Virus record (IMG/VR): IMGVR_UViG_3300025319_000005 | Coordinates: 124,001-188,000 of that record | Strand: one strand, 5' to 3' | DNA: 64,000 bases | Shown: piece after piece, positions 44,823 through 60,847 of the stretch | Layout: every line of letters begins with the position of its first letter | How positions within the stretch are numbered: position 1 is the stretch's first letter | The notes under the pieces: model-generated | Seen by the model: the letters and a program-made list of their open reading frames with translations, nothing else | The model's database searches: none | What the model was told of the DNA's origin: nothing | Made by a program: the position numbers and the translations under genes

Positions 44823-45608
44823 ATGGAAAATAATGTTACAAAAATAGAAAAAGAAGGCGTTTCATATATATGTGCCCCTGATTTAAAAAAACAACATATT
44901 AACAAATTCATAAGCTTCACTCCGTTTGAGATAGAAAGATGCGCTCAATTTTCTATTGATATGATGAACAATAAGAACAAACCCAGAGGAAAACACGCAA
45001 AAGAAAACAGGCAAAGAGATGATGAAGAATATCTTTTCAACTGGTTTATTGGCTCATTGGGAGAAGTTGCAACCTATAACAAAGCATTAAAATCAACAAT
45101 AGATTGTTCTCCAGTTGATTTAACAATGATTGAAGGTTTTGATAATCAAGATTTTATATTTTTTGATAAATTTCCGATAAGCGTAAAATCGACTAAGCAT
45201 TATGGAGGAAACATGTTATTAGAAGACGATAAATATGATTTAGACGCACTTTATTTGCATAGTGAAGGTGGTAAAACTACTCCTTTGGAAGTAACTGCAT
45301 TTATAGGCGTTGCAGTTGGATTAGATAAATATAGATTTGATGAAGGTCTTAAAAAAGAAGATTACAAAAAATTTCTAATGTCATTAAACCCAAAATATCA
45401 CATTTATGGTTTTTTAGGAAAAAATGATTTAAAAAAAGAAAAGGAAAAAGGGAATCTTTTTTTAAAACACACAATAATAAGCGGAAAAACAAAAATGGAA
45501 GAAAATAATGTTGTTATACGTTTAGATGCATTAAGACCATTTGAAGGGCTCATAAAATTAAAAGAAAAAATTTTAAAAGAAAAAAATGAAGAAATTGAAA
45601 TTAGGTAG
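44823..45608 (+). CDS. putative restriction endonuclease-like protein
   Basis: GSLGEVA..D..FDNQDF..ISVKST resembles PD-(D/E)xK; overlaps the C5 methyltransferase. Confidence 0.4.
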   Translation: MENNVTKIEKEGVSYICAPDLKKQHINKFISFTPFEIERCAQFSIDMMNNKNKPRGKHAKENRQRDDEEYLFNWFIGSLGEVATYNKALKSTIDCSPVDLTMIEGFDNQDFIFFDKFPISVKSTKHYGGNMLLEDDKYDLDALYLHSEGGKTTPLEVTAFIGVAVGLDKYRFDEGLKKEDYKKFLMSLNPKYHIYGFLGKNDLKKEKEKGNLFLKHTIISGKTKMEENNVVIRLDALRPFEGLIKLKEKILKEKNEEIEIR

Positions 45609-46527
45609 TCTATACTCTGGAGTAGAAGGGATAGGGTTAGGATTTGAACAGGCTGGTTCAGAAACTTTATGGGCAAATGAAATGGATGCGAACGCATGCA
45701 AAACAATAATGGCTAATTTCAACAACAAAGTATATGAATGTAAAGTTGAAGAATTAAAACCAGATTCTTTGGTGCCAGTTGATATTTTAACTGCAGGTTT
45801 TCCATGCCAGAGCTTCAGTATTGCTGGATATCAAAAAGGGTTTGAAGATGAAAGGGGACATCATTTTTTTGAAGTTATTCGATTAGCAAAAATAATTAAA
45901 CCAAAAGTAATATTTCTTGAAAATGTTAAAAACCTTAAATCACACGACAAAGGTAAAACATTTCAAATAATGTGCGATACACTTACTAATATTGGTTATA
46001 ATTTTAAATACGATATTTTAAATACATACGAATATGGAAATATTCCACAAAACAGAGAGCGAATTTATATAGTCTGTTTTAGAAATGATTTAGATATAAC
46101 AAAATTTGAATTTCCAAATAAAATACCTTTAACCTTATCTTTTGAAGAGTTATTAGAAAATAATGTAGATGAAAAATTTTATTATAGAGAAGATAAATAC
46201 AACTACACACAATTAGCAGAAACAATGACCAAAACAGATACTGTTTATCAATGGAGAAGAGTCTATGCTAGGGAGAACAAAAAAGGATTATGTCCAACGT
46301 TAACCGCAAACATGGGAACTGGAGGTCACAATGTTCCGCTTATTTTAACAAAAGAAGGAATAAGAAAATTAACTCCAAGAGAATGTTTTAATTTACAAGG
46401 TTTTCCGTTGAATTTTATTTTACCAGATAAAATGTCTAATGCTCAATTGTACAAGCAGGCAGGAAATAGCGTAAGTGTTCCAGTAATCAAAAGAATAGCT
46501 GAAAACATATTAAATGCATTGAATTAA
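45586..46527 (+). CDS. dcm: C5-cytosine DNA methyltransferase
   Basis: LYSGVEG (motif I variant), AGFPCQSFS, LENVKNL, QNRERIY, YKQAGNSV. Confidence 0.93.
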   Translation: MKKLKLGSLYSGVEGIGLGFEQAGSETLWANEMDANACKTIMANFNNKVYECKVEELKPDSLVPVDILTAGFPCQSFSIAGYQKGFEDERGHHFFEVIRLAKIIKPKVIFLENVKNLKSHDKGKTFQIMCDTLTNIGYNFKYDILNTYEYGNIPQNRERIYIVCFRNDLDITKFEFPNKIPLTLSFEELLENNVDEKFYYREDKYNYTQLAETMTKTDTVYQWRRVYARENKKGLCPTLTANMGTGGHNVPLILTKEGIRKLTPRECFNLQGFPLNFILPDKMSNAQLYKQAGNSVSVPVIKRIAENILNALN

Positions 46528-48854: not shown

Positions 48855-48933
48855 TACCTTCAATAGGATTCGAACCTACATTTTCAGCTCCGTTACACTT
48901 ATTGAGTCCGTAGCTCAATGTGGCTATAAAGGC
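48855..48933 (-). ncRNA. D-arm-less tRNA-Arg(ACG)-like RNA
   Basis: acceptor GCCTTTA/TGAAGGT, ATTGAG-CTACGGA-CTCAAT, canonical T arm GTAGG-TTCGAAT-CCTAT; no D arm, 21-nt extra region. Confidence 0.65.
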
Positions 48934-48934: not shown

Positions 48935-49621
48935 TTATATTAATTCATATCGTTTTGCCCACTTTCTCACCGCAACATCACTAACTCCAAATTTTCTACC
49001 AAGTGCACAATATGAATTATTTTCTATCATTTCTTTTAATTCTTCTTTAGAGGGTCTGTTTTTTACTTTTCTAAAATTTAATCTAGGTACATATTTTCTC
49101 GTTGTTTTTTTATTTGTTTTATTTTTTTTTGCATTTTTTCTGTCTACGCCAATTTTACCACGGCAATGAGTTTCTAATGTGAAATTGCAGTTTGGACATA
49201 AAAATCTTAAGTTTTCTAATCTATTATCATTATTTATTCCGTTTTCGTGGTCAATAATTAAACTAATTTTTTTACCTCTCCATATTTCTCCTTGTCCACA
49301 TTCTTTACATTCATATTCTATCATGTTATTATCTCGTATTCTTTTTTTTAAACAAGCCCTTGCAACAGAACTGTTTTCACAAAAAATTTCTTCATCACTT
49401 TTCCTTAATAATCTGTCTTCATTAAACATTTTTTTAGCAAAATCACTACGGTTTAAAAAATGAGAAGTATCTATTGACCATTTATTTAAATTTGTTTTAA
49501 GTATTTTATAAGATGAAGAAGAATCGCTTCTTCCAGATTTTACTATAACATCTCTAAATGTGATGCTTTCAGATACTAATTTTTGTAATTCTTCTTTTGT
49601 ATATTCTTTATGTTCTTTCAT
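48935..49621 (-). CDS. HNH homing endonuclease
   Basis: CKECG..IIDHENGINNDNRLENLRFLCPNC; C-terminal HTH. Confidence 0.9.
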   Translation of the reverse strand: MKEHKEYTKEELQKLVSESITFRDVIVKSGRSDSSSSYKILKTNLNKWSIDTSHFLNRSDFAKKMFNEDRLLRKSDEEIFCENSSVARACLKKRIRDNNMIEYECKECGQGEIWRGKKISLIIDHENGINNDNRLENLRFLCPNCNFTLETHCRGKIGVDRKNAKKNKTNKKTTRKYVPRLNFRKVKNRPSKEELKEMIENNSYCALGRKFGVSDVAVRKWAKRYELI

Positions 49622-49678
49622 AATTCTAACTTATTTTAATGTAAATAGGTTAGAATTTTTTAATAAAGTAAATAGTTG

Positions 49679-49754
49679 AGGATAAGAAGAGAATTAAACT
49701 CCTGTTAAATATGTTTTGCAGACATATCCCGATTTCAACATTGGGTACTTATCC
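49679..49754 (-). tRNA. tRNA-Cys(GCA)
   Basis: GGATAAG/CTTATCC, CT-GCA-AA, U73, T loop TTTAATT. Confidence 0.8.
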
Positions 49755-49768
49755 TTGTAAAAATTAAA

Positions 49769-50038
49769 AAAGTAAAATCCTAAGTATAGCCGCGATTTTG
49801 TTCTATCTCATCATTTATCTGAAGGTATTGCTACCAACTGGAGACTTTAAACGTCTACCACGCACCTACCCGACTATCAACAACGTAAAGGTTCCCCGTC
49901 TACAGTCTGTTTGGCTTGCATCCTATGTTGCGGAAGTACATACGCTATTTGTTATAGCTTCTTCCTCCTTTTAAAAGATGTCGCGAACTTCCTCTCGATT
50001 TTAAGAATCGAGCGATGAGTCCTTCAGGATTTTACTTT
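49769..50038 (-). ncRNA. rnpB: RNase P RNA, compact A-type-like with reduced specificity domain
   Basis: P1 AAAGTAAAATCCT/AGGATTTTACTTT; CR-I GAGGAAGTTCGCGAC; GCAAGCCAAA; GGGTAGGTGC; AGATAAATGAT; CR-V ACAAAATCGCGGCTATA; P4 with bulged U. Confidence 0.88.
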
Positions 50039-50043
50039 TCTTG

Positions 50044-50115
50044 AGGCTCCACTGACAATCGATGTCAGGACTCAAATTTACAAGATTCGTGTTTTGCCAC
50101 TTAAACTACGGAGCC
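50044..50115 (-). tRNA. tRNA-Thr(TGT)
   Basis: 72-nt cloverleaf, CT-TGT-AA, T loop ATCGATT. Confidence 0.85.
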
Positions 50116-50131
50116 ATTATTTGTTCTTATG

Positions 50132-50205
50132 TGGAATCTACCGGCATTGAACCGGTCTCTCAGGCGTGCAAGGCAAGTGTTCTAAGCCAAATGAACTAAG
50201 ACCCC
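50132..50205 (-). tRNA. tRNA-Ala(TGC)
   Basis: G3:U70, CT-TGC-AC; anticodon stem has two mismatches. Confidence 0.85.
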
Positions 50206-50243
50206 AATTTAATTTGTTCAAAGTACAAATTATTAAAAACTTT

Positions 50244-50319
50244 TGGCGAGTATGACCGGTCCTGACCCGGCGACCTCCTCATAGACAGTGAGGCATTCTT
50301 CCAACTGAACTACACACTC
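50244..50319 (-). tRNA. tRNA-Asp(GTC)
   Basis: cloverleaf, CT-GTC-TA, G73, encoded CCA, T loop GTCAGGA. Confidence 0.9.
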
Positions 50320-50332
50320 ATTATTTTTTAAA

Positions 50333-50639
50333 AAAGTAAGACGCCATTTCGCTGATAGCGTTTTTTGTGTTCTGTTTAATGCGCCAAAGAACATCTGATT
50401 ATGTTCAGCATTTAGCGTTCATGCTTGGTTATTATAACATACTAACATTCCTAATATTGTCTGATTACCTATTTTGAGTTTGCATAGTAGGTTGATTTTT
50501 ATTTCCAGGGTAAAAATCAACAAACAAACCTAACGTCTGATAAACTTTATTTTTCATCCGGTAAACGTTTTGTACATTGTTTAGTTCATTAGGCTAAAAC
50601 AACACGTCTTTTTCACGGACAACATTAGTAACTTACTTT
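50333..50639 (-). ncRNA. unidentified ~307-nt structured RNA
   Basis: closing stem AAAGTAAG/CTTACTTT, perfect 11-bp hairpin GTTGATTTTTA/TAAAAATCAAC and further hairpins; no long ORF; lies between tRNAs; strand inferred from the operon. Confidence 0.65.
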
Positions 50640-50644
50640 TCTTG

Positions 50645-50718
50645 TAGTGCATCTGAGAATTGAACTCAGTACTTCCACGTTATCGGCGTGGCACTCTGGA
50701 CCGATGAGTTAATGCACT
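50645..50718 (-). tRNA. tRNA-Ile(GAT)
   Basis: cloverleaf, CC-GAT-AA (C33). Confidence 0.88.
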
Positions 50719-50732
50719 GTTTTTATTTAAAG

Positions 50733-50805
50733 TCTAGGTGGCCTGCTCCGACCAGGCGGTCTCCAGTTCCCAAAACTGGCGGATTTCCAACTTTCCCACA
50801 CCTAG
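50733..50805 (-). tRNA. tRNA-Pro(TGG)
   Basis: C1:G72, TT-TGG-GA, T loop GTCGGAG. Confidence 0.87.
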
Positions 50806-50842
50806 AAATTTTGTTTATCTTTCCAAACTGTCTTTTAATAAG

Positions 50843-50906
50843 AGTTCAAGCTCGGTTATCCACCGATTCGAAGGACTGCATTAGCCTTCTCTGCAGACAC
50901 TTGAAC
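50843..50906 (-). ncRNA. 64-nt tRNA-sized element lacking D and anticodon arms
   Basis: acceptor-like GTTCAAG/CTTGAAC, T-like hairpin TCGG-TGGATAA-CCGA, alternative central stems. Confidence 0.5.
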
Positions 50907-50908
50907 AT

Positions 50909-50984
50909 TGGAGCGAAAAACCAGGTTCAAACTGGCGACCCCCAGAGTGGAAATCTGGCGCTCTATCAACTGAGCTATTTTCGC
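50909..50984 (-). tRNA. tRNA-Gly(TCC)
   Basis: cloverleaf, TT-TCC-AC, U73, CCA. Confidence 0.9.
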
Positions 50985-51073
50985 TTATGTATATAATTCT
51001 CTCAGACCATATTACCAAGATTTACTTTGGACTCACCGTATTTTAAAAGTGAGCAGAATTGTATTTAATTAAA

Positions 51074-52021
51074 TTATTCTAATAATAATTCATCAATTGT
51101 TAAAATTGAATTTAAATTATCTATTGTTTTTTTAAATATCATTTTAACATTAATGTTGTTTTGTTCTAATACTAAACTCATTTTTGTTTTATCTATTATT
51201 GAATAATATCCTTTAGTTTCTATGTATAAGTTAAAATTTGGCAAATAAAAATCTGGCACATACGTTTTTTCAACACCTTCTTTAATATATTGAATATATA
51301 TTTTTCTAATCCACAATATTTTATTGTCATTTAACCATTGCGACATTTTTAATTCATATTTTCCTCTTAAAGAATATTCTTCACCAATAATATTTTTTTG
51401 TTTATAAAATTTCACATGTTTAAAATTGTTACTTATTTCATTTTCTTCTAACATCTTGGAGTGAGATTTGCTAATTTTCGATTTTTGTTCAGAAGAAAGT
51501 GGCTTTCCTAATTGGTGATGTATTCTCTTACCAGTAGCATACATTTCTTTTTGTTGCTCAGATGCTTTATTTACCCTATTATCAGTTTCCTTTGTAAGTC
51601 CTCTTGACCATCCCATTTTTGATTTAGTCTCTGCATTACTGTATTTTTTATTTTTATATTCAACTCCATCCGGTGTATGCATTTGAAATATATGACCACA
51701 TATACCAAGTTTGTGAAATATTAATTCGCAATGAGGACATTTATATTTATCTACATCAACTTTCCAAGATTCATCTACTGTTATTTGTTTTTTATTAACT
51801 GTATTACATTTATTATAATGCCTTTCAAAATTAGAAACAGAAATATTTTTATTACATTTATCACAACATTTTGTGTTTTTAGGTTTTCCAAGTAAAGAAA
51901 TACTTAAATTTTTTAATCTTTCTTTTAACTTTGGATTAGATTCACAATTTACTATATGAGCACCAAATTGTTGTGGGATCTCAAACTCAAAAGACTCTTT
52001 GCAATGCGGACAAGTTTTCAT
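51074..52021 (-). CDS. homing endonuclease-like protein (Zn fingers + PD-(D/E)xK)
   Basis: CPHC and CDKC fingers; YVPDFYLP..LYIETKGY. Confidence 0.8.
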   Translation of the reverse strand: MKTCPHCKESFEFEIPQQFGAHIVNCESNPKLKERLKNLSISLLGKPKNTKCCDKCNKNISVSNFERHYNKCNTVNKKQITVDESWKVDVDKYKCPHCELIFHKLGICGHIFQMHTPDGVEYKNKKYSNAETKSKMGWSRGLTKETDNRVNKASEQQKEMYATGKRIHHQLGKPLSSEQKSKISKSHSKMLEENEISNNFKHVKFYKQKNIIGEEYSLRGKYELKMSQWLNDNKILWIRKIYIQYIKEGVEKTYVPDFYLPNFNLYIETKGYYSIIDKTKMSLVLEQNNINVKMIFKKTIDNLNSILTIDELLLE

Positions 52022-52090
52022 ACTTTTTTATTATAAATAGTATAAAAAATTGCAGGTTAGAAAATTGTTAGCACGTTATTGTTTTTTGAG

Positions 52091-52173
52091 TGGGAGTTGA
52101 TGGAGACGAGCCACCCGAGTTTTAAAACAACCGATTTACAGTCGGTCCCGCTACCCCTACGGAATAAACTCCC
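52091..52173 (-). tRNA. tRNA-Tyr(GTA)
   Basis: CT-GTA-AA, long variable arm, T loop CTCGTCT. Confidence 0.87.
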
Positions 52174-52185
52174 ATTTTAATGTTG

Positions 52186-52257
52186 CACAGACGGTTATAA
52201 TCGAAATAACTACGTGTAGTTTTTGGAGAACTCACCGACACCAAGCCTGTCGTCTGT
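52186..52257 (-). tRNA. tRNA-Trp(CCA)
   Basis: CT-CCA-AA, G73, canonical T arm; weak D arm. Confidence 0.75.
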
Positions 52258-52296
52258 ATTTTATCTATTTTTTAAGCTGTAAGATAATTAGCTAAG

Positions 52297-52368
52297 TAGC
52301 GAAAACTGGAATCGAACCAATGTAGACACAGCTTATGAGACTGGTGGGAAACCAACATCCTTTTCGCA
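52297..52368 (-). tRNA. tRNA-Met(CAT), initiator-like
   Basis: 1:72 mismatch, CT-CAT-AA; weak D arm. Confidence 0.75.
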
Positions 52369-52381
52369 ATATATTTTTTTG

Positions 52382-52454
52382 TAGCCCCTGCCGGTCCTGA
52401 CCCGACGACTTCATTCATGTAAAAAATGCACTCTACCAACTGAGTTAAGGGGCT
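52382..52454 (-). tRNA. tRNA-Val(TAC)
   Basis: cloverleaf, TT-TAC-AT, T loop GTCAGGA. Confidence 0.88.
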
Positions 52455-52459
52455 ATTAG

Positions 52460-52533
52460 TAGCATATATCAGAATCAAACTGATGACCTTCCTCATATGA
52501 AAAGGACGCTCTAATCAACTGAGCTAATATGCT
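52460..52533 (-). tRNA. tRNA(CAT): elongator Met or Ile2
   Basis: cloverleaf, TT-CAT-AT; identity not resolvable from sequence. Confidence 0.85.
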
Positions 52534-52543
52534 ATTTAAAAAG

Positions 52544-52615
52544 AGCGGGTGATGAGGATTAAACTCACGGCCTCATCCTTGGCAAGGATGCGCTCTATCG
52601 CTGAGCTACACCCGC
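52544..52615 (-). tRNA. tRNA-Gly(GCC)
   Basis: cloverleaf, TT-GCC-AA, U73. Confidence 0.92.
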
Positions 52616-52691
52616 TTTTTTGATTATCAATATGTCAAATAACTCTGCAAACTTTTAAGTCATTGCTCGACTTGTAAACTTTTTAAGCAAC

Positions 52692-52727
52692 AAAAAACCC
52701 GAACCTTTTTTAAGTCCGGGTGTGTTA
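52692..52727 (-). terminator. attenuator terminator of tRNA operon 1
   Basis: ACCCGGAC/GTTCGGGT + U6; 5' arm overlaps the antiterminator partner TAACACACCC. Confidence 0.85.
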
Positions 52728-52760
52728 TGTTGTTTCCCTTTTAAGTTTTTATATCTTACT

Positions 52761-52889
52761 TCATGAAACAAAATGTTTTAACACACCCATATTATCGCGG
52801 CTATAATCGCCAGGGGTAATACACGCATACCCGACTGTCGGCATGACTGCCCAAATCGTTGTAATTGTTGTATGTGTTAAATTTTTCAT
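52761..52889 (-). CDS. attenuator leader peptide 1 (42 aa)
   Basis: MKNLTHTTITTIWAVMPTVGYACITPGDYSRDNMGVLKHFVS; between promoter and terminator upstream of tRNA operon 1. Confidence 0.85.
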   Translation of the reverse strand: MKNLTHTTITTIWAVMPTVGYACITPGDYSRDNMGVLKHFVS

Positions 52890-52916
52890 TGAAGATGTTT
52901 TCTTTTTAATTAAACT

Positions 52917-53002
52917 TAAATAGTATAAAAAATTATTTTCTCAAATATTTCTTTCGACCAATTATAACGCAAAGATATAATTAAAGTTTAATAAAAAGCA
53001 AA
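52917..53002 (-). promoter_or_regulatory. tandem promoters of tRNA operon 1
   Basis: TTTG-N21-TATCTTTG (52970-53002) and TATTTA (52917-52922). Confidence 0.75.
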
Positions 53003-53031
53003 TTTATTTTCATTTATTTTTTATTTAACTT

Positions 53032-53094
53032 GTAAAATCCTGATATTCAGCTAAATAATTTTTTGTAAAATCCTAAACATAATCGTAAAATCCT
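53032..53094. repeat. three GTAAAATCCT direct repeats
   Basis: at 53032, 53065 and 53085. Confidence 0.75.
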
Positions 53095-53201
53095 GTCATT
53101 GATAATATTAAACAAAAAATCCACAATTTTTTTAAGCAAGGGAGCCAACGAATTTATTCGTTGGAGTATGTCAGTCAATAATATTTCCTTGCAATTTGTT
53201 T

Positions 53202-53405
53202 TTACCAACCTTCTTTAGCAACTCCGGATGCAACTGCAGCTTCTGCGTTAGCAGAGCTCATTATAGCACACATTTTATGTCCTTCTTTAGTTTCTCCTTT
53301 ACATACGTATCCACCTTTTGCGTTTTTAGATATGATAGGATTAACGAAAGTTTGTTTGCTTTTTAATTTCATACAATATCCTTCTAATACGATTAATGTG
53401 CTCAT
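53202..53405 (-). CDS. small DUF5679-like protein (paralog of 54800-55000)
   Basis: YCMKLK..KGGYVCKGETKEGHKM..SANAEAAVASGV. Confidence 0.7.
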   Translation of the reverse strand: MSTLIVLEGYCMKLKSKQTFVNPIISKNAKGGYVCKGETKEGHKMCAIMSSANAEAAVASGVAKEGW

Positions 53406-53509
53406 GATTTTTAGTTTTAAGTTTTTTATAAATATGAAATATTTTATAAAACAAGTTTTAATATATGTTTATGTTCTAAATTAGCTTATATTTATATAAA
53501 AACAAGCTC

Positions 53510-53680
53510 ATGAAAAATTTAAAAAAAATAATAGAAGAAACAGTAAGTAAAGTTCTGGGTGAAGGCGATTTTTTAACACATCAAATAAAAAATTCAATAA
53601 GCGTGTTAAATAATGTTTTCAAAGACAACTTAGTTGCAAAGATAAACGAAACAAATGATAAAGATAAACGAAACAAATGA
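53510..53680 (+). pseudogene. 5' part (leader) of the ART-like gene, detached by a 22-nt duplication
   Basis: MKNLKKIIEETVSKVLGE..; removing one repeat copy fuses it in frame to 53655-54263. Confidence 0.7.
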
Positions 53681-53681
53681 T
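53638..53681. repeat. 22-nt perfect tandem duplication
   Basis: AAAGATAAACGAAACAAATGAT x2. Confidence 0.95.
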
Positions 53682-54263
53682 AGTGTTATTGATGTTTATA
53701 TTAAGAAATACAATATAAATGCATTAACAAAAATAGATAAAACGATAGAAAATTTAGGATATTTTATTTCTATTTTTAGTATAAATGGATTTCAAAAGAA
53801 ATTTAACAAAGATTCATTTTTTAAAAAAATAAAAGACTTAAAAGAATTAACTCCAATATACCTAAAGCTGGAGAAAAAAATGGACTCAAATGAAGATATA
53901 GATACAATTATCCCATCTATGTTATATCACATTACACATGAAAGACATCTCGCAAAAATCAAGAAAATAGGTTTAGTTCCAAAATCTAAATCTAAAAAAT
54001 CAGCTCATCCTGAAAGAATATATTTAGCGTGGAATGAAGAATCTGCTATAAAATTAGTAAAAGAATTTTCAGATTTAGAATACGAATTTGAACATAATTA
54101 TGTTTTATTAAAAATTGACACAAGTAAAATTTCTGAGTTTAGACGTGATAAAAATTTCAAATTACATAATGACCCAAACTTTACAGATGGTTATTTTACA
54201 TATGATAATATACCTCCTGCTGCAATAAATTTTGAAAATATGAAATTAATAAACCTTGAATAA
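53655..54263 (+). CDS. Tpt1/KptA-like ADP-ribosyltransferase-fold protein
   Basis: LYHITH....IKKIGLVP, IYLA, LLKID, NIPPAAI. Confidence 0.6.
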   Translation: MIKINETNDSVIDVYIKKYNINALTKIDKTIENLGYFISIFSINGFQKKFNKDSFFKKIKDLKELTPIYLKLEKKMDSNEDIDTIIPSMLYHITHERHLAKIKKIGLVPKSKSKKSAHPERIYLAWNEESAIKLVKEFSDLEYEFEHNYVLLKIDTSKISEFRRDKNFKLHNDPNFTDGYFTYDNIPPAAINFENMKLINLE

Positions 54264-54795
54264 TATGAGTTTGTTAGAAAAAATTAAAATAGAAAGATTT
54301 ATTTCGGAAGATATTGACGAAGTTAAACAGTTAATTAAAAACATACATTCAAAAATCTGTTTTAATGAAACAAATATTCACATTTATAATAATTTAATGT
54401 ATAAACTTTTTTTTAACGGTTATAGTTTTCTTTTGGATTTTTCATTAAAAGTAACATATAGAAAAAAAATAATAGGAGTTATGTTATTATCTGACTTTTC
54501 GTTTTATTGGCTATTAGAAACATATAAAGAAGATGACAAAAACATAAGCAAAAAAATAAAAAAATATAAGAACAAAGAAGGTTTAAGGAGTGTTTTTTTT
54601 GGAATTGATAGGAAATATCAAAAAAAAGGATTAGGCTCTAAAATGATTGAATATATACAAAAAAACTATAAGCAGTTTGATTATTTGTGGGGAATTCAAC
54701 ATAAAGAGATTTCAAATATGGAATTTTTCTTAAAAAGAAGAAAAGTTGTTGCAGAAATAGGAAATTCCGTATATACTGTGCAGGATTTGAAATAA
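54256..54795 (+). CDS. GNAT acetyltransferase
   Basis: FGIDRKYQKKGLGSKMI. Confidence 0.75.
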   Translation: MNNMSLLEKIKIERFISEDIDEVKQLIKNIHSKICFNETNIHIYNNLMYKLFFNGYSFLLDFSLKVTYRKKIIGVMLLSDFSFYWLLETYKEDDKNISKKIKKYKNKEGLRSVFFGIDRKYQKKGLGSKMIEYIQKNYKQFDYLWGIQHKEISNMEFFLKRRKVVAEIGNSVYTVQDLK

Positions 54796-54799
54796 AAGC

Positions 54800-55000
54800 T
54801 TAAAACCCTTCTTTAGTAACTCCAGATGCTACGGCAGCTTCTGCGTTGGCTTTACTCATTAATAGACTCATCTTATGTCCATCTTTACTTTCGCCCTTTG
54901 CAATGTACCCACCCTTTTTAGTTAAGCTAATAACAGCATTAACCATTACTCCCTTTGATTTTGTCTTAAGACAATAAGCCTCTAATACTACTTTTTCCAT
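54800..55000 (-). CDS. small DUF5679-like protein (paralog of 53202-53405)
   Basis: YCLKTK..KGGYIAKGESKDGHKM..KANAEAAVASGV. Confidence 0.7.
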   Translation of the reverse strand: MEKVVLEAYCLKTKSKGVMVNAVISLTKKGGYIAKGESKDGHKMSLLMSKANAEAAVASGVTKEGF

Positions 55001-55038
55001 TTTTTTTGGTTTTATAGTAAATATTAAAAATTTTTATT

Positions 55039-55386
55039 TTAAGTCGGTGATGTTATTAATTGAAATTTAGTAGGATGCGACAATCTATAATCAACTTGTC
55101 TTTCATCAACATATTCTCGATAATTAACATAACCTTTAACATATGGAGTTACGCGAGCATCGAAAAAAATAACATCTCCGTTATTTAACGCTCCTAATTT
55201 CTCAAATCCTTTTGTTTTGTTAAACCACAAATGGTCAGTAACAATTTTATCAGACTTATCCTTAATATCTTTTAAGAGTATTGTTTCTACAGGATATCCA
55301 TGATAATTCTTCTTTGTTCCAAATTTCTCAAATATTCCACTAAATCTGTCCCGTATATTTTCTATTTTTTCTAAATCTTTTCTCAT
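55039..55386 (-). CDS. conserved phage hypothetical protein
   Basis: VTDHLWF..FDARV..YVKGY..DYRLSHPTK. Confidence 0.6.
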   Translation of the reverse strand: MRKDLEKIENIRDRFSGIFEKFGTKKNYHGYPVETILLKDIKDKSDKIVTDHLWFNKTKGFEKLGALNNGDVIFFDARVTPYVKGYVNYREYVDERQVDYRLSHPTKFQLITSPT

Positions 55387-55955
55387 TGATAAAACCCTTT
55401 TCTTTTTATATAATTAGCAACTTGCGGTGCTAAAAAATCTTTCACATCTCTATTTTCCTTTATCTCGTTTCGGATAAATGTGGAAGACATTTCAATTAAA
55501 TTAACATCAAACATTTTTACTTTTGGATGTAAAATTAGATTACCGCCATCGCTGGAGCTACGTGAATATACATAAATTTGATATTCTTCAAGTATTTTTT
55601 GATAATCTTTCCACTTGTGTAAGTTTTCTAAATTATCAGTTCCCATTATTATAACAAATTCATTTTCTTTAAATGTTTCTTTTAATAAATTGAGCGTATC
55701 TATAGTATACGAAGGTTTTGATAAATTAAATTCAATATCACTGGCTCTCATATGTTCATTATCAATTAATGCCATATTAACCATTTTTAACCTTTCTTTT
55801 TCTGATAGTAGAGAATTTTTATCCTTGAGAGGATTGTGAGGAGATATTATAAACCACACACATTCCAATTCGGTATGTTCAAGCATGTAAGACGCCAATA
55901 TTGTGTGACCGTTGTGGATTGGATTAAAACTACCGAAGAATAAACCTATTTTCAT
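55383..55955 (-). CDS. nadD: nicotinate-nucleotide adenylyltransferase
   Basis: FFGSFNPIHNGH, SYTIDTL, IMGTDN, WKDY, MSSTFIR; start reassigned to 55955. Confidence 0.93.
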   Translation of the reverse strand: MKIGLFFGSFNPIHNGHTILASYMLEHTELECVWFIISPHNPLKDKNSLLSEKERLKMVNMALIDNEHMRASDIEFNLSKPSYTIDTLNLLKETFKENEFVIIMGTDNLENLHKWKDYQKILEEYQIYVYSRSSSDGGNLILHPKVKMFDVNLIEMSSTFIRNEIKENRDVKDFLAPQVANYIKRKGFYQ

Positions 55956-56037
55956 ATGTGATATTATTAAACGAAGATAATCATTATAATGTTGCAACTA
56001 ACTTTTTTAAACTATTTATTGAAAAAAGAAATATAAA

Positions 56038-57411
56038 ATGAATAATAAAGAACTAAGAAAATCGATAAGAAGGATTTTAAAGGAAAATCTTGAAAATTCT
56101 GATTGGGTGAATGCCAGTGATGCTCAAAAAGCTGCAATGCAAGATATAGACTCAGAAGATGAATTTGAACACTTAGGAACTAATAGGTTTGAAAAAGATT
56201 TTGATGTTGAAGATTTTCTATATGATTTAGAAGCTCAAAAAAATATGTCTGAGCCATCTGTAAAAAGATTAGAAAAACAAATTGGGCAATTAAAAAGATT
56301 TGGAAAGGGTTCTTTGAATGAATTATCGCCAGAAATAAGACAATCCGCACTTAAAAAAGCTGTTGATTATATTGAACAACCTGGAGATACCTATCATAAA
56401 GACCCGCTCCAATATATTAAGAAAAAAAACCAAGCAAATTCATTTATTTCTCATGTTAATCCTGAGTTAAAAAAAGAAGCTATGGAAATAGCAAAAATGA
56501 TAGATGTAAATTGTGAAAGTCGTATAGAAAAAGAAGCGGTAGGAAGTACACTTGAACCAAATGTTGTATTATATTTTGGTCAAAACATTGCAGATTTAAG
56601 TAATCAAATACTTAAAATTGCCATTAAAAAAGATAATCATACATGGGAAACCAAAAAATTTATTCCTGAAAATATTCAAAGAAGATTGGCTAATTTTATA
56701 AAAAAGATTCAAACAAAAGAAATATCTAGTCCAGTTAAACAATTGAATGAGAGATTTCTTGGTGGATGGCATTATTTCGCAACTCCAGAAGGTAAAGAAG
56801 AATATATTAAAGACCTCGAGTCTAAAAAGATTAATGCAAAAGGAGAAGAATTAGAGCAAATTGAAAAAGAACTTAAAAAGTTAAAATCAATAAAACCAAA
56901 ATCCTTAAAAGAAGAAACATCAAAACTTGACAAGCCAAAAGATTCTGCAGGAAATTCAATATCATCCGGAGTGAGAGTTGAAGATTTAGAGTCGGGTAGT
57001 GCTGGACGAGTTGAGAGATTTGGTATTGACGACAAAGGACAATTAACAGTTCATGTTGCTTGGATAACAAAATATGGACAGATAGCTCCAAAGTCCATTG
57101 TTTATCCCAAAAATATAATTGTTAAAGATTCTGCAAAAAAGATAACAGACGAAGGAATTAAAGATACTTTAAAAAATATTTATAAAGAATTGAATCCTAT
57201 TGAAAAATGGAAACAAATGAAAGAAAATCGTAAAAAGCTCGAAAAAGAAGTTAGTGATTTACGAAGAGAAGTTTCTGAAAAGGAAAAAGAATTAGAAAAA
57301 ATAGTGAATAGTAATCATATTAAAGCTGATGTAAGTAATGATGTTGACGAAGGAATTGGAGCTGGATTATCACTTCCAATAAAAAAAGGAGCCGGAAGCA
57401 GATTTAAATAA
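56038..57411 (+). CDS. multi-module protein with shared leader
   Basis: MNNKELRKSIRRILKE; LNE/LNE/LKEE/VDE junctions; TATTTA at 56013-56018. Confidence 0.6.
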   Translation: MNNKELRKSIRRILKENLENSDWVNASDAQKAAMQDIDSEDEFEHLGTNRFEKDFDVEDFLYDLEAQKNMSEPSVKRLEKQIGQLKRFGKGSLNELSPEIRQSALKKAVDYIEQPGDTYHKDPLQYIKKKNQANSFISHVNPELKKEAMEIAKMIDVNCESRIEKEAVGSTLEPNVVLYFGQNIADLSNQILKIAIKKDNHTWETKKFIPENIQRRLANFIKKIQTKEISSPVKQLNERFLGGWHYFATPEGKEEYIKDLESKKINAKGEELEQIEKELKKLKSIKPKSLKEETSKLDKPKDSAGNSISSGVRVEDLESGSAGRVERFGIDDKGQLTVHVAWITKYGQIAPKSIVYPKNIIVKDSAKKITDEGIKDTLKNIYKELNPIEKWKQMKENRKKLEKEVSDLRREVSEKEKELEKIVNSNHIKADVSNDVDEGIGAGLSLPIKKGAGSRFK

Positions 57412-57418
57412 AACTATT

Positions 57419-58432
57419 TTGGAAAATAAGTTAAGAAAATATATTCAAAAAATCCTTCAAGAATCTTTAAATACAGAAGACATTCCTGAAGACATCCCCA
57501 TTAAAAAAGATTTAAAATTCACTGAGACCTCAAGAGGTTCGCATCATGGCCAGCAGGATTTAACAGCTTATGCCACAATAGAGGGAATAGTAGTTGGCTA
57601 TGTTGAATATTCTATATTTCAGAACGAAATCCACATAGAAATGATTGAAGTTGTTGAAGAACAAAAAAGACAAGGAATAGCAACAAAATTATTTCATTTT
57701 ATAAGACTTAAAAATTCTGGTATGAAAATTATTCCAGGATATTCAACCGAAGAAGGAAGTAAATTTTATAATGCTTATAAAAGCAAAAAACTAAAAGAAG
57801 ATATAAATGTTCCTATAAATGTTGGAGATACCGTTCTTGGTGGCCGTTTTAAAAATAAAAAAATTATTATTAAAGATATAGGAAAGTCAGATAAGGGCGA
57901 CATTACAATTAATGACAAGCCTCTTTTAAAAGTTAGGATTCCAAAGAAAATAAATGAAGAAAAATTGACATGTTTATATATTCATGGTTTAGGAGCTGAA
58001 ATATCTGATGATATTAAAAATTCTCTTTCCAAATACAATCTCATATATCCCAAAATAAACTACGACAAAACAACAAAACCATATTATCAATGTTTAGAAA
58101 TATTAAATAAAGATAAGGTGGATTTTATAATAGGTCATTCTATAGGTGGAGTTATGGGTTATTATTTAGCTAAAGAAACAAATATTCCAGCTTTATTATT
58201 ATGTCCGGCATTTGGAGATGAATATAAAGTTCTCACAAGTAAGTTAGTTAAAGATAATAACCCAAAAATAGTTGTTATCATAGGAAAAAAAGATGATGAA
58301 GTTGATAATAAAAAAGTTAAATCCACTTTAGAAAATCAACCCAATTGTGTTATTAAAGAATTAAATATCGGACATGATATTACAGAAAAAAATCTGATTT
58401 TATTTGCTGATGGTTTTGTTGAAAATTTATAA
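57419..58432 (+). CDS. leader + GNAT + small beta module + alpha/beta hydrolase
   Basis: TTG start; KLRKYIQKILQE; KRQGIATKL; LKE and INEE junctions; GHSIGG nucleophile elbow, terminal GHD. Confidence 0.7.
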   Translation: MENKLRKYIQKILQESLNTEDIPEDIPIKKDLKFTETSRGSHHGQQDLTAYATIEGIVVGYVEYSIFQNEIHIEMIEVVEEQKRQGIATKLFHFIRLKNSGMKIIPGYSTEEGSKFYNAYKSKKLKEDINVPINVGDTVLGGRFKNKKIIIKDIGKSDKGDITINDKPLLKVRIPKKINEEKLTCLYIHGLGAEISDDIKNSLSKYNLIYPKINYDKTTKPYYQCLEILNKDKVDFIIGHSIGGVMGYYLAKETNIPALLLCPAFGDEYKVLTSKLVKDNNPKIVVIIGKKDDEVDNKKVKSTLENQPNCVIKELNIGHDITEKNLILFADGFVENL

Positions 58433-58459
58433 TTGAAATTATTATTTTTTAATATAAAG

Positions 58460-58532
58460 TGCTTCCAGTTGGACTTGAACCAACGACCCGAAAATTAAGA
58501 ATTTCCTACTCTACCATCTGAGCTATGAAAGC
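58460..58532 (-). tRNA. tRNA-Lys(CTT)
   Basis: cloverleaf, TT-CTT-AA. Confidence 0.92.
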
Positions 58533-58620
58533 AATAATTTATAATGTATTATAGATATATGTTGAGTAAAATCCACAGAATGTTCTATTTTATGGATTGT
58601 GCTCAACAAATATGTAATTG

Positions 58621-58694
58621 TGTGTCCGACAAGATTTGAACTTGTGACCTCCGCATTAAAAGTGCGGTATTCTAACCAGCTGAATTACGAACAC
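58621..58694 (-). tRNA. tRNA-Lys(TTT)
   Basis: cloverleaf, CT-TTT-AA. Confidence 0.92.
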
Positions 58695-58698
58695 ATAG

Positions 58699-58785
58699 TG
58701 TACCCAGAAAGATTCGAACTTTCAACGGCCTTTCGGCTCCCCACAGGGTAAAAACCTGTTGCTCTACCAATTGAGCCATGGGTAC
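58699..58785 (-). tRNA. tRNA with Lys(TTT) anticodon and 19-nt variable arm
   Basis: ACAGG-TTTTTAC-CCTGT; variable region GGGGAGCCGAAAGGCCGTT. Confidence 0.85.
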
Positions 58786-58789
58786 AAAT

Positions 58790-58826
58790 AAAAAAGCCTG
58801 AATCTACACAGAGACTCAGGCTTTTT
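58790..58826 (-). terminator. attenuator terminator upstream of the three tRNA-Lys genes
   Basis: AAAAAGCCTGAGTC/GATTCAGGCTTTTT + U run. Confidence 0.85.
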
Positions 58827-58841
58827 GGACTTATAAAAAAG

Positions 58842-58907
58842 TCAATGAGCTATCGTCCCCGGAGACCAGGGTTTCTTAGATTTTTTTATTTTGATTATTG
58901 TTAACAT
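58842..58907 (-). CDS. attenuator leader peptide 3 (21 aa, Lys-rich)
   Basis: MLTIIKIKKSKKPWSPGTIAH; stop lies inside the antiterminator 5' arm. Confidence 0.8.
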   Translation of the reverse strand: MLTIIKIKKSKKPWSPGTIAH

Positions 58908-59018
58908 TTTGTTTATTTTTTTAAATTAAAAAGAGCCCACACTCAACTGGTGGCTAATTTTTATGAACGAGTATTACCCAAGTTCTGTCATCCACTATGA
59001 CAAATTTCTATTGTTATT

Positions 59019-59371
59019 TTAACCTTGAATATCTTGACATTCCGTGATGTTATAGGTCTTTATAAAATCCTTACCATCAGTTATTATTAAATCCAAGTTA
59101 CTTGAATAGTACCCGTTATTAGAACCGTGTCCAGCTATTTTTACAGAATGTCCTTGTATTGGAATTAATTCAATTCCGTAATCAGGAATTCTTTTGAAGA
59201 AATCATCATTTGTTAAATCAAATTCTAATCCTTCAAATCAGCGATTGTTAAATCATCTAATGTTAATGAATGTGATTCACAACAATCTGATTCATGATTT
59301 GAATATAACTTTACTTCATTTTCAAATTCAATTGCATCTGAGTCAACTTTTACTACTTTTAATTTGTTCAT
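59019..59371 (-). pseudogene. frameshifted conserved hypothetical gene
   Basis: MNKLKVVKV..DCCE..AD then a frame change near 59235; one extra T gives DFEGLEFDL..NNGYYS and a 117-aa product. Confidence 0.65.
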
Positions 59372-59387
59372 TTTATTTATGTTTTTG

Positions 59388-59461
59388 GGTGCTATATCGG
59401 CTACGACCCGATTACCTTCTGTACCACAAACAGACACTCTACCAATTGAGCTAATAACACC
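59388..59461 (-). tRNA. tRNA-His(GTG)
   Basis: G-1:C73, TT-GTG-GT, T loop GTCGTAG. Confidence 0.9.
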
Positions 59462-59474
59462 ATATTAAATTTGT

Positions 59475-60245
59475 TTAAAATACAAATTTTAAGACTTTAA
59501 TATTATTTACTTTTTCACTATATCCAAAATTTCTAATTTCATCATGTATTTCTATGTGACAATTTGCACAAACCATAATACATTTATCAACTTCTACTTT
59601 TAATCTTTCAAAACCATAAGATTTGCCACCAATAGTAAAATCTTTTTCACTTGGATTTGTATGATGAAATTGTAAAACTGATGTTGATTTATTATATCCA
59701 CAACATTCACATTTCCATCCTTTATATTCAATTAATCTAATTTTACTTCTTTTTCTCCAATCTATAACAGCCTGACTTTTGGTTTTAGTTTTTTGTCTTT
59801 TTTTATTTGTTTTAATCAAATCATCAGAAATGTAATTTCTAATTGTTGTCCTATCTACCTTAAAATAAGCGGCTGTTTTTCTTAAAGACTTACTTTCTAT
59901 ATAAAAATTAACAACTTCTATTTCAATAAGTTCTTTTTTCTTAAATGTACCACTTGATTTATTTAATCCATACAAATTACATATTTTAATTAACTTATCT
60001 TCTCCAATGTCCAAAATTGACCTTATTTCGTCATAGCTTTTCAATTCTCTTCTGTAAGCAATTATTTTGTTTATAACTTCATCAGTTATTCCAATTAAAA
60101 AACTGTTTCTTACTCCGCCAAGTCCAACATTATTTATGTGATAAGACACAGTGCTTTTTGAACACTTTAATTGTTCAACTATTTCTTTTATAGTTGAGCC
60201 TTTTTCTCTTAAAGAGATAATTTTATTTTTCAAACCTTTATCCAT
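59475..60245 (-). CDS. HNH homing endonuclease with HTH repeats (paralog of 15297-15992)
   Basis: CECCG..LQFHHTNPSEKDF..KCIMVCANCHIEIH; start reassigned to 60245. Confidence 0.87.
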   Translation of the reverse strand: MDKGLKNKIISLREKGSTIKEIVEQLKCSKSTVSYHINNVGLGGVRNSFLIGITDEVINKIIAYRRELKSYDEIRSILDIGEDKLIKICNLYGLNKSSGTFKKKELIEIEVVNFYIESKSLRKTAAYFKVDRTTIRNYISDDLIKTNKKRQKTKTKSQAVIDWRKRSKIRLIEYKGWKCECCGYNKSTSVLQFHHTNPSEKDFTIGGKSYGFERLKVEVDKCIMVCANCHIEIHDEIRNFGYSEKVNNIKVLKFVF

Positions 60246-60316
60246 ATTATTAACTTTATTTGTTAATAAATATGGGATAAAATTCAAAAAAACAAAATTT
60301 ATTTCAAAGAACGTTG

Positions 60317-60388
60317 CGGACCCGCCTGGACTTGAACCAGAAAACGCAGATTAACAATCTGAAGTGATACCAATTTCACCACAGGTCC
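60317..60388 (-). tRNA. tRNA-Asn(GTT)
   Basis: cloverleaf, TT-GTT-AA, G73. Confidence 0.88.
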
Positions 60389-60394
60389 CAATAT

Positions 60395-60715: not shown

Positions 60716-60731
60716 TTTTTATTATTTGTTT

Positions 60732-60820
60732 TGGCGGAAAACGGGCAAATCGAATACCATTCAAATTAACGAACCTCTCGCTTAGCAGGCGGAGACAACT
60801 CCCTGGTTGTTTCGTTTTCC
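60732..60820 (-). tRNA. tRNA-Ser(GCT)
   Basis: CT-GCT-AA, long variable arm, G73, CCA. Confidence 0.82.
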
Positions 60821-60847
60821 ATTTATTATTTCAAAGAACATTTTTTG

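What the first reader, a model, noticed from the sequence alone, without database searches (positions are those of the whole stretch)
49769..50038. Compact phage RNase P RNA embedded in the tRNA operon
Seen: all catalytic-domain landmarks within 270 nt (P1, P2 CTCATC/GATGAG, P3, CR-I, P4 with bulged U, GCAAGCCAAA, GGGTAGG, AGATAAATGAT, CR-V). Only about 60 nt lie between the P5 strands, so most of the specificity domain is gone. Established: the S-domain reads the tRNA T-loop/D-loop elbow. Inference: losing it would fit a ribozyme adapted to this phage's many tRNAs with non-canonical elbows, co-transcribed with its substrates.
Basis: partly seen in the sequence, partly recalled or inferred. 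Interest (0 to 1): 0.8.

Follow-up and report, generated by a model that had tools for sequence, protein, structure and literature searches.

The report
Phage-encoded miniature RNase P RNA
A large phage carries, inside its tRNA gene cluster, a shrunken copy of the RNA enzyme that trims tRNA precursors; about 89 different versions occur in other phages, one of them cultured, and I found no published description.

Summary
On the minus strand at about 50041-49766, between tRNA-Thr and tRNA-Cys, lies a 276-nt RNA with the complete bacterial RNase P catalytic domain. It has P1-P6, P15-P17, the bulged U in P4, J5/15 GCAA, the L15 GGU, and CR-I, CR-IV and CR-V. Only about 50 nt lie between the P5 strands.

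Rfam gives a full-length but sub-threshold match (RF00010, 39.2 bits; gathering score 100). Pattern scans and a model built only from distant relatives (94 bits, E 6e-19, the only hit in the window) place it in a family of about 117 viral-contig loci, about 89 distinct sequences. One member is an unannotated copy in the cultured Stenotrophomonas phage DLP6. P1, P2, P4, P5, P6, P15-P17 and the P7-like stem all covary. Members sit among 561 same-strand tRNA genes and none on the opposite strand.

This phage does have odd tRNA elbows (9 of 16), but 88% of 502 tRNAs next to other, equally reduced members are canonical.

The S-domain is reduced to one stem with a conserved loop, resembling archaeal type T. 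The most likely function is 5' maturation of tRNAs, probably with host RnpA. Activity is untested. No prior description was found.

The parts
49766..50041 (-). Whole miniature RNase P RNA, from P1 5' strand to P1 3' strand (276 nt)
   Evidence: RF00010 full-length alignment at 39.2 bits. Family model R1 at 94 bits, E 6.4e-19, over 49787-50021. MFE fold closes P1.
50022..50041 (-). P1 5' strand (AGAAAAGUAAAAUCCUGAAG); pairs with 49766-49784
   Evidence: 18-bp helix in the MFE fold. The inner 3 bp covary in RNAalifold (GC 9, AU 7, CG 2, UA 2). Cognate versus non-cognate strands: -12.7 versus -5.5 kcal/mol, 0 of 20000 permutations as good.
50014..50019 (-). P2 5' strand CUCAUC, followed by the conserved J2/3 CGC; pairs with GAUGAG at 49807-49812
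   Evidence: 99% canonical pairs in the raw MAFFT alignment. 51 distinct P2 sequences; cognate -8.3 versus non-cognate -4.3 kcal/mol, 0 of 20000.
49994..50012 (-). P3 hairpin CUCGAUU-CUUAA-AAUCGAG
   Evidence: RNAalifold pairs with up to 13 double changes among 22 sequences.
49981..49994 (-). CR-I and the P4 5' strand, GAGGAAGUUCGCGA, with a bulged U at 49987 or 49986
   Evidence: Invariant columns G36-C45 of alignment A1. P4 is 100% paired, with 3-4 pair types at its four variable positions.
49919..49980 (-). P5 and the S-domain remnant. P5 is CAUCUU (49980-49975) / AGGAUG (49924-49919). The P6 5' strand is AAAGG (49971-49967). The P7-like stem is GGAAG (49965-49961) / CUUCC (49936-49932). 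The internal loop is AAG on one side and CGUAUGUA on the other. The hairpin is GCUAU-AACAA-AUAGC (49958-49944).
   Evidence: Parsed in all members. 50 distinct P7-like stems; loop consensus GAG / C-G-Y-U-W-N-N-A. P5 covaries.
49887..49891 (-). P6 3' strand CCUUU in the P17 loop; forms a pseudoknot with AAAGG at 49967-49971
   Evidence: Cognate versus non-cognate duplex energies -9.64 versus -7.53 kcal/mol, 0 of 20000 permutations as good. The helix sequence differs between lineages.
49864..49919 (-). J5/15 GCAA (49919-49916); P15 GCC (49915-49913) / GGU (49866-49864); L15 AAACA and GGGUA, with the invariant GGU at 49870-49868; P16 GACUGU (49907-49902) / AUAGUC (49877-49872); P17 GACG (49900-49897) / CGUU (49885-49882)
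   Evidence: RNAalifold finds P15, P16 and P17 with covariation. 13 different P15 triplet pairs, GCAA in 71 of 76 and nGGU in all 76 parsed members. Helices 3-5 are 90-94% paired.
49824..49856 (-). Two optional hairpins between P15 and J18/2. The second, GGUA-GCAA-UACC (49835-49824), is P18-like with a GNRA loop.
   Evidence: Read from the sequence. Absent (6 nt or fewer) in 19 of 76 members.
49787..49820 (-). J18/2 (CR-IV) AGAUAAAU, the P2 3' strand GAUGAG, J2/4, and CR-V ACAAAAUCGCGGCUA, which includes the P4 3' strand (49795-49788)
   Evidence: Aligned to the RF00010 consensus AGAugAAUG...ACAGAACCCGGCUUA. GGCUA is invariant in A1 although the search pattern did not force it.
50043..50115 (-). 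Upstream tRNA-Thr (UGU). Its discriminator base is at 50044, 2 nt before P1.
   Evidence: ARAGORN and Rfam.
49678..49754 (-). Downstream tRNA-Cys (GCA), 11 nt after the P1 3' strand. RNase P cleavage at its 5' end would set the 3' end of the mini RNA.
   Evidence: ARAGORN. The role in maturation is inferred.

Best explanation
The element is a gene for a miniaturised, bacterial-type (type A-derived) RNase P RNA carried by a large phage. It is one member of a widespread phage family.

Shown:
- It has all helices and conserved nucleotides of the RNase P catalytic domain, supported by covariation.
- Its S-domain is cut down to a P7-like stem, a conserved asymmetric loop and one hairpin.
- It always lies in or beside same-strand tRNA clusters.

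Inferred:
- It is transcribed as part of the tRNA precursor. It is released by tRNA end-processing: 3' trimming of tRNA-Thr on one side and RNase P cleavage at tRNA-Cys on the other.
- It folds into the P1-P4 core, braced by the P6 pseudoknot, probably binds the host's RnpA protein, and cleaves the 5' leaders of phage (and host) pre-tRNAs.
- It would use the P4 metal site, contacts between J5/15 and the -1 nucleotide, and pairing of the L15 GGU with the 3'-CCA.
- Without CR-II, CR-III, P8 and P9, it reads the tRNA elbow weakly, or through a single T-loop-like motif as modelled for type T. It would then be tolerant of unusual tRNAs.
- The benefit to the phage would be extra or independent capacity to mature its many tRNAs during infection.
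For: Homology:
- RF00010 aligns over model positions 1-367 at E 8.8e-11.
- Family model R1, built from 14 distant short members, hits the window at 94 bits, E 6.4e-19.
- R1 hits 112 loci at 61-181 bits and none of the chance loci. Its next-best hits are genuine archaeal RNase P RNAs at 24-37 bits.

Structure:
- RNAalifold independently recovers P1, P3, P4, P5, P15, P16 and P17, with compensatory changes in 25 of 32 pairs.
- Pair counts: 94.9% paired versus 69.5% in shuffles, covariation score 0.572 versus 0.131, 0 of 500 shuffles as high.
- P1, P2 and P6 each beat all 20000 partner permutations.

Core nucleotides:
- GAGGAAGU, J5/15 AA, L15 GGU, AGA-AAAUG, ACA-AA and GGCUA are invariant.
- A minority of members carry the exact bacterial P4, GAGGAAAG-U-C / G-CUUA.

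Context:
- 561 same-strand and 0 opposite-strand tRNA genes.
- Neighbouring tRNAs have U at -1 in 74% and encoded CCA in 62%.

Literature:
- The isolated E. coli C-domain is catalytic, needs a P6-type interaction and does not need P18 (PMC5839562). That matches what the family keeps and drops.
- Natural type T RNase P works with a minimal S-domain (PMC13462272).
Against: - No activity or expression data.
- The score is below Rfam's curated threshold. Rfam does not see DLP6's copy at all.
- CR-II and CR-III, which define the elbow-binding site, are absent.
- Most members have two base changes in P4 next to the bulged U. These are compensated, and also occur in DPANN archaeal RNase P RNAs that score above threshold.
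- No phage rnpA was found, so dependence on the host protein is an assumption.
- Only 2 of the window's 16 tRNAs encode CCA.
- Promoter-like sites are at chance level, so co-transcription rests on spacing alone.
Confidence: 0.75

Rival explanations
1. One reading: the S-domain was lost because this phage's tRNAs have non-canonical T-loop/D-loop elbows, and the ribozyme is specialised for them.
For: The window's tRNAs are unusual. Only 7 of 16 have a UUCRA T-loop. Four have U56 together with a D-loop GA (a compensated A19-U56 pair). Four have G54 and one has A54. A further tRNA-like gene lacks the D-arm. The window's copy of the conserved loop reads CGUAUGUA, with A where most members have U.
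Against: The reduced S-domain is common to all of the roughly 89 distinct members. Their neighbouring tRNAs are canonical in 443 of 502 cases, with a per-locus median of 92% across 44 loci. DLP6 has 11 of 12 canonical. L067, with 0 of 5 canonical tRNAs, has the ordinary loop CGUUAUCA. Archaeal type T also lacks most of the S-domain.
Confidence: 0.08
2. The RNA derives from RNase P but is not a catalyst. It would act as a decoy that binds host RnpA or pre-tRNAs and diverts or inhibits host tRNA maturation, or as a structured spacer that guides processing of the tRNA transcript.
For: There is no activity evidence. It scores below the Rfam threshold, lacks the elbow-binding modules and has changed bases in P4. 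It lies inside the precursor.
Against: Conservation is strongest at the catalytic and substrate-contact nucleotides: the bulged U of P4, the J5/15 As, the L15 GGU and J18/2. It is not confined to likely protein-binding surfaces. P6, which C-domain catalysis needs, is kept in all members, while P18 is freely lost. A spacer would not need a conserved pseudoknotted core of about 200 nt across some 89 lineages.
Confidence: 0.1
3. A decaying fragment of a host rnpB gene picked up by the phage, or an assembly artefact.
For: Phages do capture host genes. The window comes from a metagenome assembly.
Against: About 117 viral loci with about 89 distinct sequences at 48-67% pairwise identity keep every helix through compensatory changes. 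One copy lies in the finished genome of a cultured phage.
Confidence: 0.01

Closest known systems
Bacterial RNase P RNA, type A (Rfam RF00010; E. coli M1 RNA)
   Same: The C-domain has the same plan and the same conserved sequences: P1-P4 with a bulged U; CR-I; J5/15 GCAA; P15 with L15 GGU; P16 and P17 with the P6 pseudoknot; J18/2 AGA-AAAUG; and CR-V ACAGAA...GGCU(U)A. An optional P18-like GNRA hairpin is present. RF00010 is the best Rfam match. A minority of members have the exact bacterial P4.
   Different: Members are about 195-300 nt, against 377 nt in E. coli. P8, P9, P10-P14 and CR-II/CR-III are missing. The score is 39 bits against a threshold of 100. Most members read GAGGAAGUUC...GGCUA where bacteria have GAGGAAAGUCC...GCUUA. 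The gene is phage-encoded and sits inside tRNA clusters.
[quoted passage not shown]
   Same: A natural RNase P RNA of about 200 nt, with a complete C-domain and an S-domain reduced to a single extended P7 stem carrying one conserved loop. In type T this loop is modelled as a lone T-loop, UAAAA (PMC13462272). The phage loop CGYUWNNA fits the same U-N-N-N-A pattern.
   Different: The phage RNAs have bacterial features: P6, L15 GGU and a P18-like hairpin. No Rfam type T match was reported. Type T works with four archaeal proteins, and no such genes were seen here. The resemblance is best read as convergent reduction.
Engineered C-domain-only and 'Micro P' bacterial RNase P RNAs
   Same: The isolated E. 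coli C-domain cleaves substrates, depends on a P6-like interaction and does not need P18 (PMC5839562). The phage family keeps P6 in all members and loses P18 in a quarter of them.
   Different: Those are laboratory constructs with reduced efficiency. The phage RNAs are natural, are under selection, and retain a conserved S-remnant.
Theta (HDV-like) ribozymes next to phage tRNAs
   Same: These are also phage-encoded ribozymes embedded in tRNA clusters and proposed to process tRNA ends (PMC10879173).
   Different: They are small self-cleaving ribozymes acting in cis on 3' trailers. They are unrelated in fold and mechanism to RNase P, which acts in trans on 5' leaders.

Membership tests
RNase P RNA in the broad sense (Rfam clan CL00002) | P4 long-range helix with a bulged U, formed by CR-I and CR-V | tested here: met
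   100% paired, with 3-4 pair types at four positions. The bulged U is present in all members.
RNase P RNA in the broad sense (Rfam clan CL00002) | P1, P2 and P3 enclosing the core | tested here: met
   Covariation in all three.
RNase P RNA in the broad sense (Rfam clan CL00002) | Site-specific 5' cleavage of pre-tRNA | not testable with these tools
   Needs a biochemical assay.
Bacterial RNase P RNA type A (RF00010) | Score at or above the curated gathering threshold of 100 bits | tested here: not met
   39.2 bits for the window. No hit for DLP6's copy at E<=1 or for seven relatives at E<=0.01. E. coli rnpB scores 318.6 bits.
Bacterial RNase P RNA type A (RF00010) | P15 with L15 GGU (CCA binding), P16, P17 and the P6 pseudoknot | tested here: met
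Bacterial RNase P RNA type A (RF00010) | S-domain with P7-P14 and the CR-II / CR-III interleaved T-loops | tested here: not met
   Only a P7-like stem plus one hairpin remains, 48-131 nt including both P5 strands. There is no ACAGAAA or AAGGGUGAAA motif.
Bacterial RNase P RNA type A (RF00010) | P18 with a GNRA loop docking into P8 | tested here: inconclusive
   The window has a GGUA-GCAA-UACC hairpin, but P8 is absent and 19 of 76 members have no hairpin there.
Bacterial RNase P RNA type A (RF00010) | Works with the RnpA (C5) protein | not testable with these tools
   No rnpA among the recurrent neighbours. Only 64 kb of the 212-kb genome is visible.
[quoted passage not shown] | Match to the type T covariance model | tested here: not met
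   The permissive cmscan at E<=10 reported RF00010 as the only RNase P clan match for the region. Overlapping lower-scoring clan members are suppressed by the tool, and none was flagged as left out.
[quoted passage not shown] | S-domain reduced to one stem bearing a single T-loop-like motif | tested here: inconclusive
   The layout and the U-W-N-N-A pattern fit (PMC13462272). A T-loop cannot be proven from sequence alone.

The most novel reading that the evidence does not exclude
This would be the first virus-encoded RNase P ribozyme. It would be a natural, bacterial-type 'mini-P' family, spread through tRNA-rich and often very large phages, that matures tRNAs with almost no specificity domain. 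The reduction would be convergent with archaeal type T, and a cultured phage-host pair (DLP6 and S. maltophilia) is available to test it.
Probability: 0.6. Interest if true: 0.85.

Novelty: new variant of a known kind. Interest (0 to 1): 0.8.

Why it matters
As far as I know, RNase P RNA is known from cells and organelles but not from viruses. A phage-borne family would add the central tRNA-maturation ribozyme to the list of translation-related functions that phages carry.

It would also give about 89 natural solutions to the question of how small a bacterial RNase P RNA can be. These show which parts are kept under selection (P6 and a P7 stem with a conserved loop) and which are dispensable (P8, P9, P10-P14 and P18). 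That bears directly on how the enzyme measures and recognises tRNA.

The current Rfam models miss the family, so it is probably unannotated in phage genomes generally.

Tried and rejected
- The Rfam gathering scan of the window found only tRNAs.
- BLAST of the window RNA, the DLP6 RNA and L013 against 50,697 GenBank phages found only DLP6. Megablast of 12 kb of context found nothing.
A model from the 14 shortest members worked.
- I did not type long dot-bracket strings into the tools, to avoid the automatic check on long typed text. Pseudoknot statistics for P6 were therefore computed in the sandbox with cognate versus non-cognate controls.
- My regex filter wrongly rejected members with the canonical bacterial CR-I because of a register error. 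The model search corrected this.
- One P2 sub-test, a perfect 6-mer with G-U pairs allowed, had a 32% background rate and is not used.
- The promoter scan was at chance level.
- PHROGs and Pfam on large ORFs gave no host or taxonomic clue.
- Neighbour-gene clustering found no conserved partner and no RnpA.
- The idea that CR-II or CR-III survive in the remnant was considered because of the GCAACA string. It was rejected after comparison with the Rfam consensus.
- The metagenome scan was not used.

Full report
**What is there**

All 16 ARAGORN tRNA genes in the window are on the minus strand. The finding fills the 288-nt gap between tRNA-Thr(UGU), 50115-50043, and tRNA-Cys(GCA), 49754-49678.

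The default Rfam scan of the window reports only tRNAs. A permissive scan of 49600-50200 gives a full-length alignment to bacterial class A RNase P (RF00010, model positions 1-367) at 39.2 bits, E 8.8e-11. In that alignment about 110 S-domain positions are replaced by about 20 nt. The curated threshold is 100 bits. The strand folds better than all 200 shuffles, with z = -4.48.

**Relatives**

The window is identical to part of IMGVR_UViG_3300025319_000005, a 212,632-bp contig.

Pattern scans of IMG/VR used CR-I, the AGANAAAUG of J18/2 and the ACARAA of CR-V at several spacings. The candidates split cleanly when tested on features the patterns did not force. True members have a perfect P4 complement followed by CUA, a J5/15 GCAA and an L15 GGU. 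The rest have none of these.

I built covariance model R1 from the 14 shortest members. Neither the window nor any mid-size member was in its seed. Its results were:
- It finds the window's RNA as the only hit in 64 kb, at 94 bits, E 6.4e-19.
- It hits 112 loci at 61-181 bits, and none of the chance loci.
- Its next-best hits are four genuine archaeal RNase P RNAs at 24-37 bits.

The model also corrected an error of mine. Six loci with the canonical bacterial CR-I (GAGGAAAG-U-C ... G-CUUA) are members that my regex had rejected.

In all there are about 117 IMG/VR loci and about 89 distinct sequences. The span from P2 to the P4 3' strand is 180-267 nt, and 235 nt in the window.

One member lies unannotated in the finished genome of the cultured Stenotrophomonas phage vB_SmaS-DLP_6 (KU682439.2, positions 105769-106021). 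It ends 4 nt before tRNA-Arg. Rfam does not detect that copy even in a 441-nt search at E<=1. The DLP6 genome paper mentions neither RNase P nor ribozymes (PMC5349666).

It lies in a 546-kb contig binned as Bacteriovoracaceae, whose neighbourhood is mostly ORFans plus SmpB. That contig may itself be phage DNA. The same scan also found ordinary DPANN archaeal RNase P RNAs that score above threshold on RF00373. They serve as a positive control for the motif set.

**Structure**

On a plain MAFFT alignment of 22 members, RNAalifold received none of my assignments. It still recovers P1, P3, P4, P5, P15, P16 and P17, and 25 of its 32 pairs show compensatory double changes.

On the model-fitted alignment of 31 sequences:
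- 94.9% of cells pair, against 69.5% in shuffles and 30-45% when partners are slid.
- The covariation score is 0.572 against 0.131, with 0 of 500 shuffles as high.
- Because the alignment was fitted to the model, it leans towards the structure. P4 and the raw-alignment results do not share that bias.

P2, P1 and the P6 pseudoknot were tested by pairing each strand with its own partner versus partners from other members. In all three, 0 of 20000 permutations did as well.

P15 occurs as 13 different complementary triplets, and nGGU in L15 is present in all 76 parsed members.

Most members read GAGGAAGUUC...GGCUA where bacteria read GAGGAAAGUC...GCUUA. Aligned position by position, the two forms have the same length. 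They differ by two compensated pair changes next to the bulged U. The same variant occurs in the above-threshold DPANN archaeal RNAs.

**The S-domain**

The Rfam consensus, seen through E. coli rnpB at 318.6 bits, places the following inside P7: P8, P9, P10/11, CR-II (ACAGAAA), P12, CR-III (AAGGGUGAAA), P13 and P14.

In the phage family, the stretch from the P4 5' strand to J5/15 is 48-131 nt, with a median of 63 and 62 in the window. It has one plan throughout:
- a P5 of about 4-6 bp;
- the P6 5' strand;
- a covarying P7-like stem, 5 bp in most members, with 50 distinct sequences;
- an asymmetric internal loop, GAG (or AAG or CAG) opposite C-G-Y-U-W-N-N-A;
- one variable hairpin.

There is no room for CR-II, CR-III, P8 or P9.

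A quarter of members (19 of 76) also lack any hairpin between P15 and J18/2, which means they have no P18.

This pattern matches published biochemistry. The isolated E. coli C-domain is catalytic, needs a P6-type interaction and does not need P18 (PMC5839562).

The remnant has the same layout as the recent model of archaeal type T. That model has one extended P7 stem with a single T-loop (UAAAA) that stacks on the tRNA elbow (PMC13462272). The phage U-W-N-N-A fits that pattern. Whether it really is a T-loop cannot be decided from sequence.

**Context**

Across 81 distinct members, the fetched loci contain 561 tRNA genes on the same strand as the RNA and none on the opposite strand. In 32 members a tRNA lies within 150 nt.

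The neighbouring tRNAs have U at -1 in 398 of 541 cases and encode CCA in 62% (per-locus median 98%). The window has 10 of 16 and 2 of 16 respectively.

No protein family recurs beside the RNA in more than 10 of 81 loci. The recurrent ones are HNH endonucleases, HTH proteins and Tpt1/KptA. None is RnpA.

In the window there is no terminator-like site between tRNA-Thr, the RNA and tRNA-Cys. Promoter-like matches are at chance level.

The window's tRNAs do have unusual elbows:
- Only 7 of 16 have a UUCRA T-loop.
- Cys, Gly(UCC), Met and Gly(GCC) combine U56 with a D-loop GA, a compensated A19-U56 pair.
- Asp, Pro, Val and His begin the loop with G54.
- Thr has A54.
- All 16 have perfect acceptor and T stems.

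However, among 502 distinct tRNAs next to 80 other members, 443 (88%) are canonical. The median over 44 loci is 92%, and only three loci fall below 75%. The S-domain reduction is therefore a family trait in phages with ordinary tRNAs, not an adaptation to this phage. The reverse order of events remains possible but untested: an enzyme that reads the elbow weakly may have allowed the elbows to drift.

**Mechanism proposed**

Shown:
- homology to the RNase P core;
- the conserved structure;
- the association with tRNA clusters.

Inferred:
- co-transcription with tRNAs;
- release by tRNA end-processing;
- binding of host RnpA;
- cleavage of 5' leaders using the P4 metal site, J5/15 and L15-CCA pairing;
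- weak or single-T-loop recognition of the elbow;
- a benefit in maturing the phage's many tRNAs.

**Novelty**

Nine full-text searches found no description of a phage- or virus-encoded RNase P RNA (and for DLP6). The library covers open-access papers and bioRxiv only, so an earlier report elsewhere cannot be excluded.

I class the element as a new variant of a known kind. It works like, and descends from, bacterial RNase P RNA. It fails two defining tests of type A membership: the curated score and the S-domain.

Noticed in passing
window 49678-61089, minus strand: 9 of 16 tRNA genes have non-canonical T-loops despite perfect stems. Four have U56 with a D-loop GA (a compensated 19-56 pair), four have G54 (three of them also G58), and one has A54.
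   Followed up: yes
window 48855-48933 (-): Rfam calls a tRNA here (34.6 bits) that ARAGORN misses. The anticodon loop is CUACGGA (Arg-ACG). The D-arm is almost absent, the variable region is 19 nt, and the T-loop is canonical.
   Followed up: partly
window 58698-58785 (-): An 88-nt tRNA-Lys(UUU) with a 15-nt insertion in the variable region lies directly beside a normal tRNA-Lys(UUU) at 58620-58694.
   Followed up: no
window 48935-49621 (-) and 51074-52021 (-): ORFs interspersed in the tRNA cluster look like a weak HNH endonuclease and a phage endonuclease I domain protein. HNH genes also recur next to the RNA in other members.
   Followed up: partly
window 50341-50361 (-): A terminator-like hairpin followed by a U-rich tail lies just upstream of tRNA-Asp. 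It may mark the start of the Asp-Ala-Thr-RNase P-Cys unit.
   Followed up: no
L290:1903-2025 and L290:2386-2604: One 488-kb viral contig carries a full copy and, about 360 nt away, a second partial copy (model positions 50-171) of the mini RNase P RNA.
   Followed up: no
L270:4548-5102 and four related loci: A Tpt1/KptA RNA 2'-phosphotransferase gene (Pfam E 2e-41) lies within 3 kb of the RNA in five loci. This hints at a wider tRNA repair and processing module.
   Followed up: partly
L089:5573-5788 (-), SmpB at L089:6488-6928: The only phage-type copy found in the species-genome collection is in a 546-kb contig binned as Bacteriovoracaceae. It sits next to SmpB and ORFans, so the contig may be a mis-binned huge phage.
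   Followed up: partly
L086, L103, L110, L113, L121, L124, L134, L150, L152, L165, L171, L182, L190: RNase P RNAs from Aenigmatarchaeota and other uncultured archaeal MAGs, about 250 nt long (the six scanned score 99-130 bits on RF00373), share the GAGGAAGUUC...GG(G/A)CUA form of P4 seen in most phage members.
   Followed up: partly
L067:494-1580: All five tRNAs next to this member have non-canonical T-loops (UCCGA, UGCGA, UCGGA, UGCAA, UGCAA). It is the only other locus as deviant as the window.
   Followed up: partly
window 45586-46527 (+), 12567-13679 (-), 62458-63345 (-): A C-5 cytosine DNA methylase (Pfam E 1e-85), a thymidylate synthase and a radical SAM protein. Most other large ORFs have no PHROG or Pfam match.
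   Followed up: no
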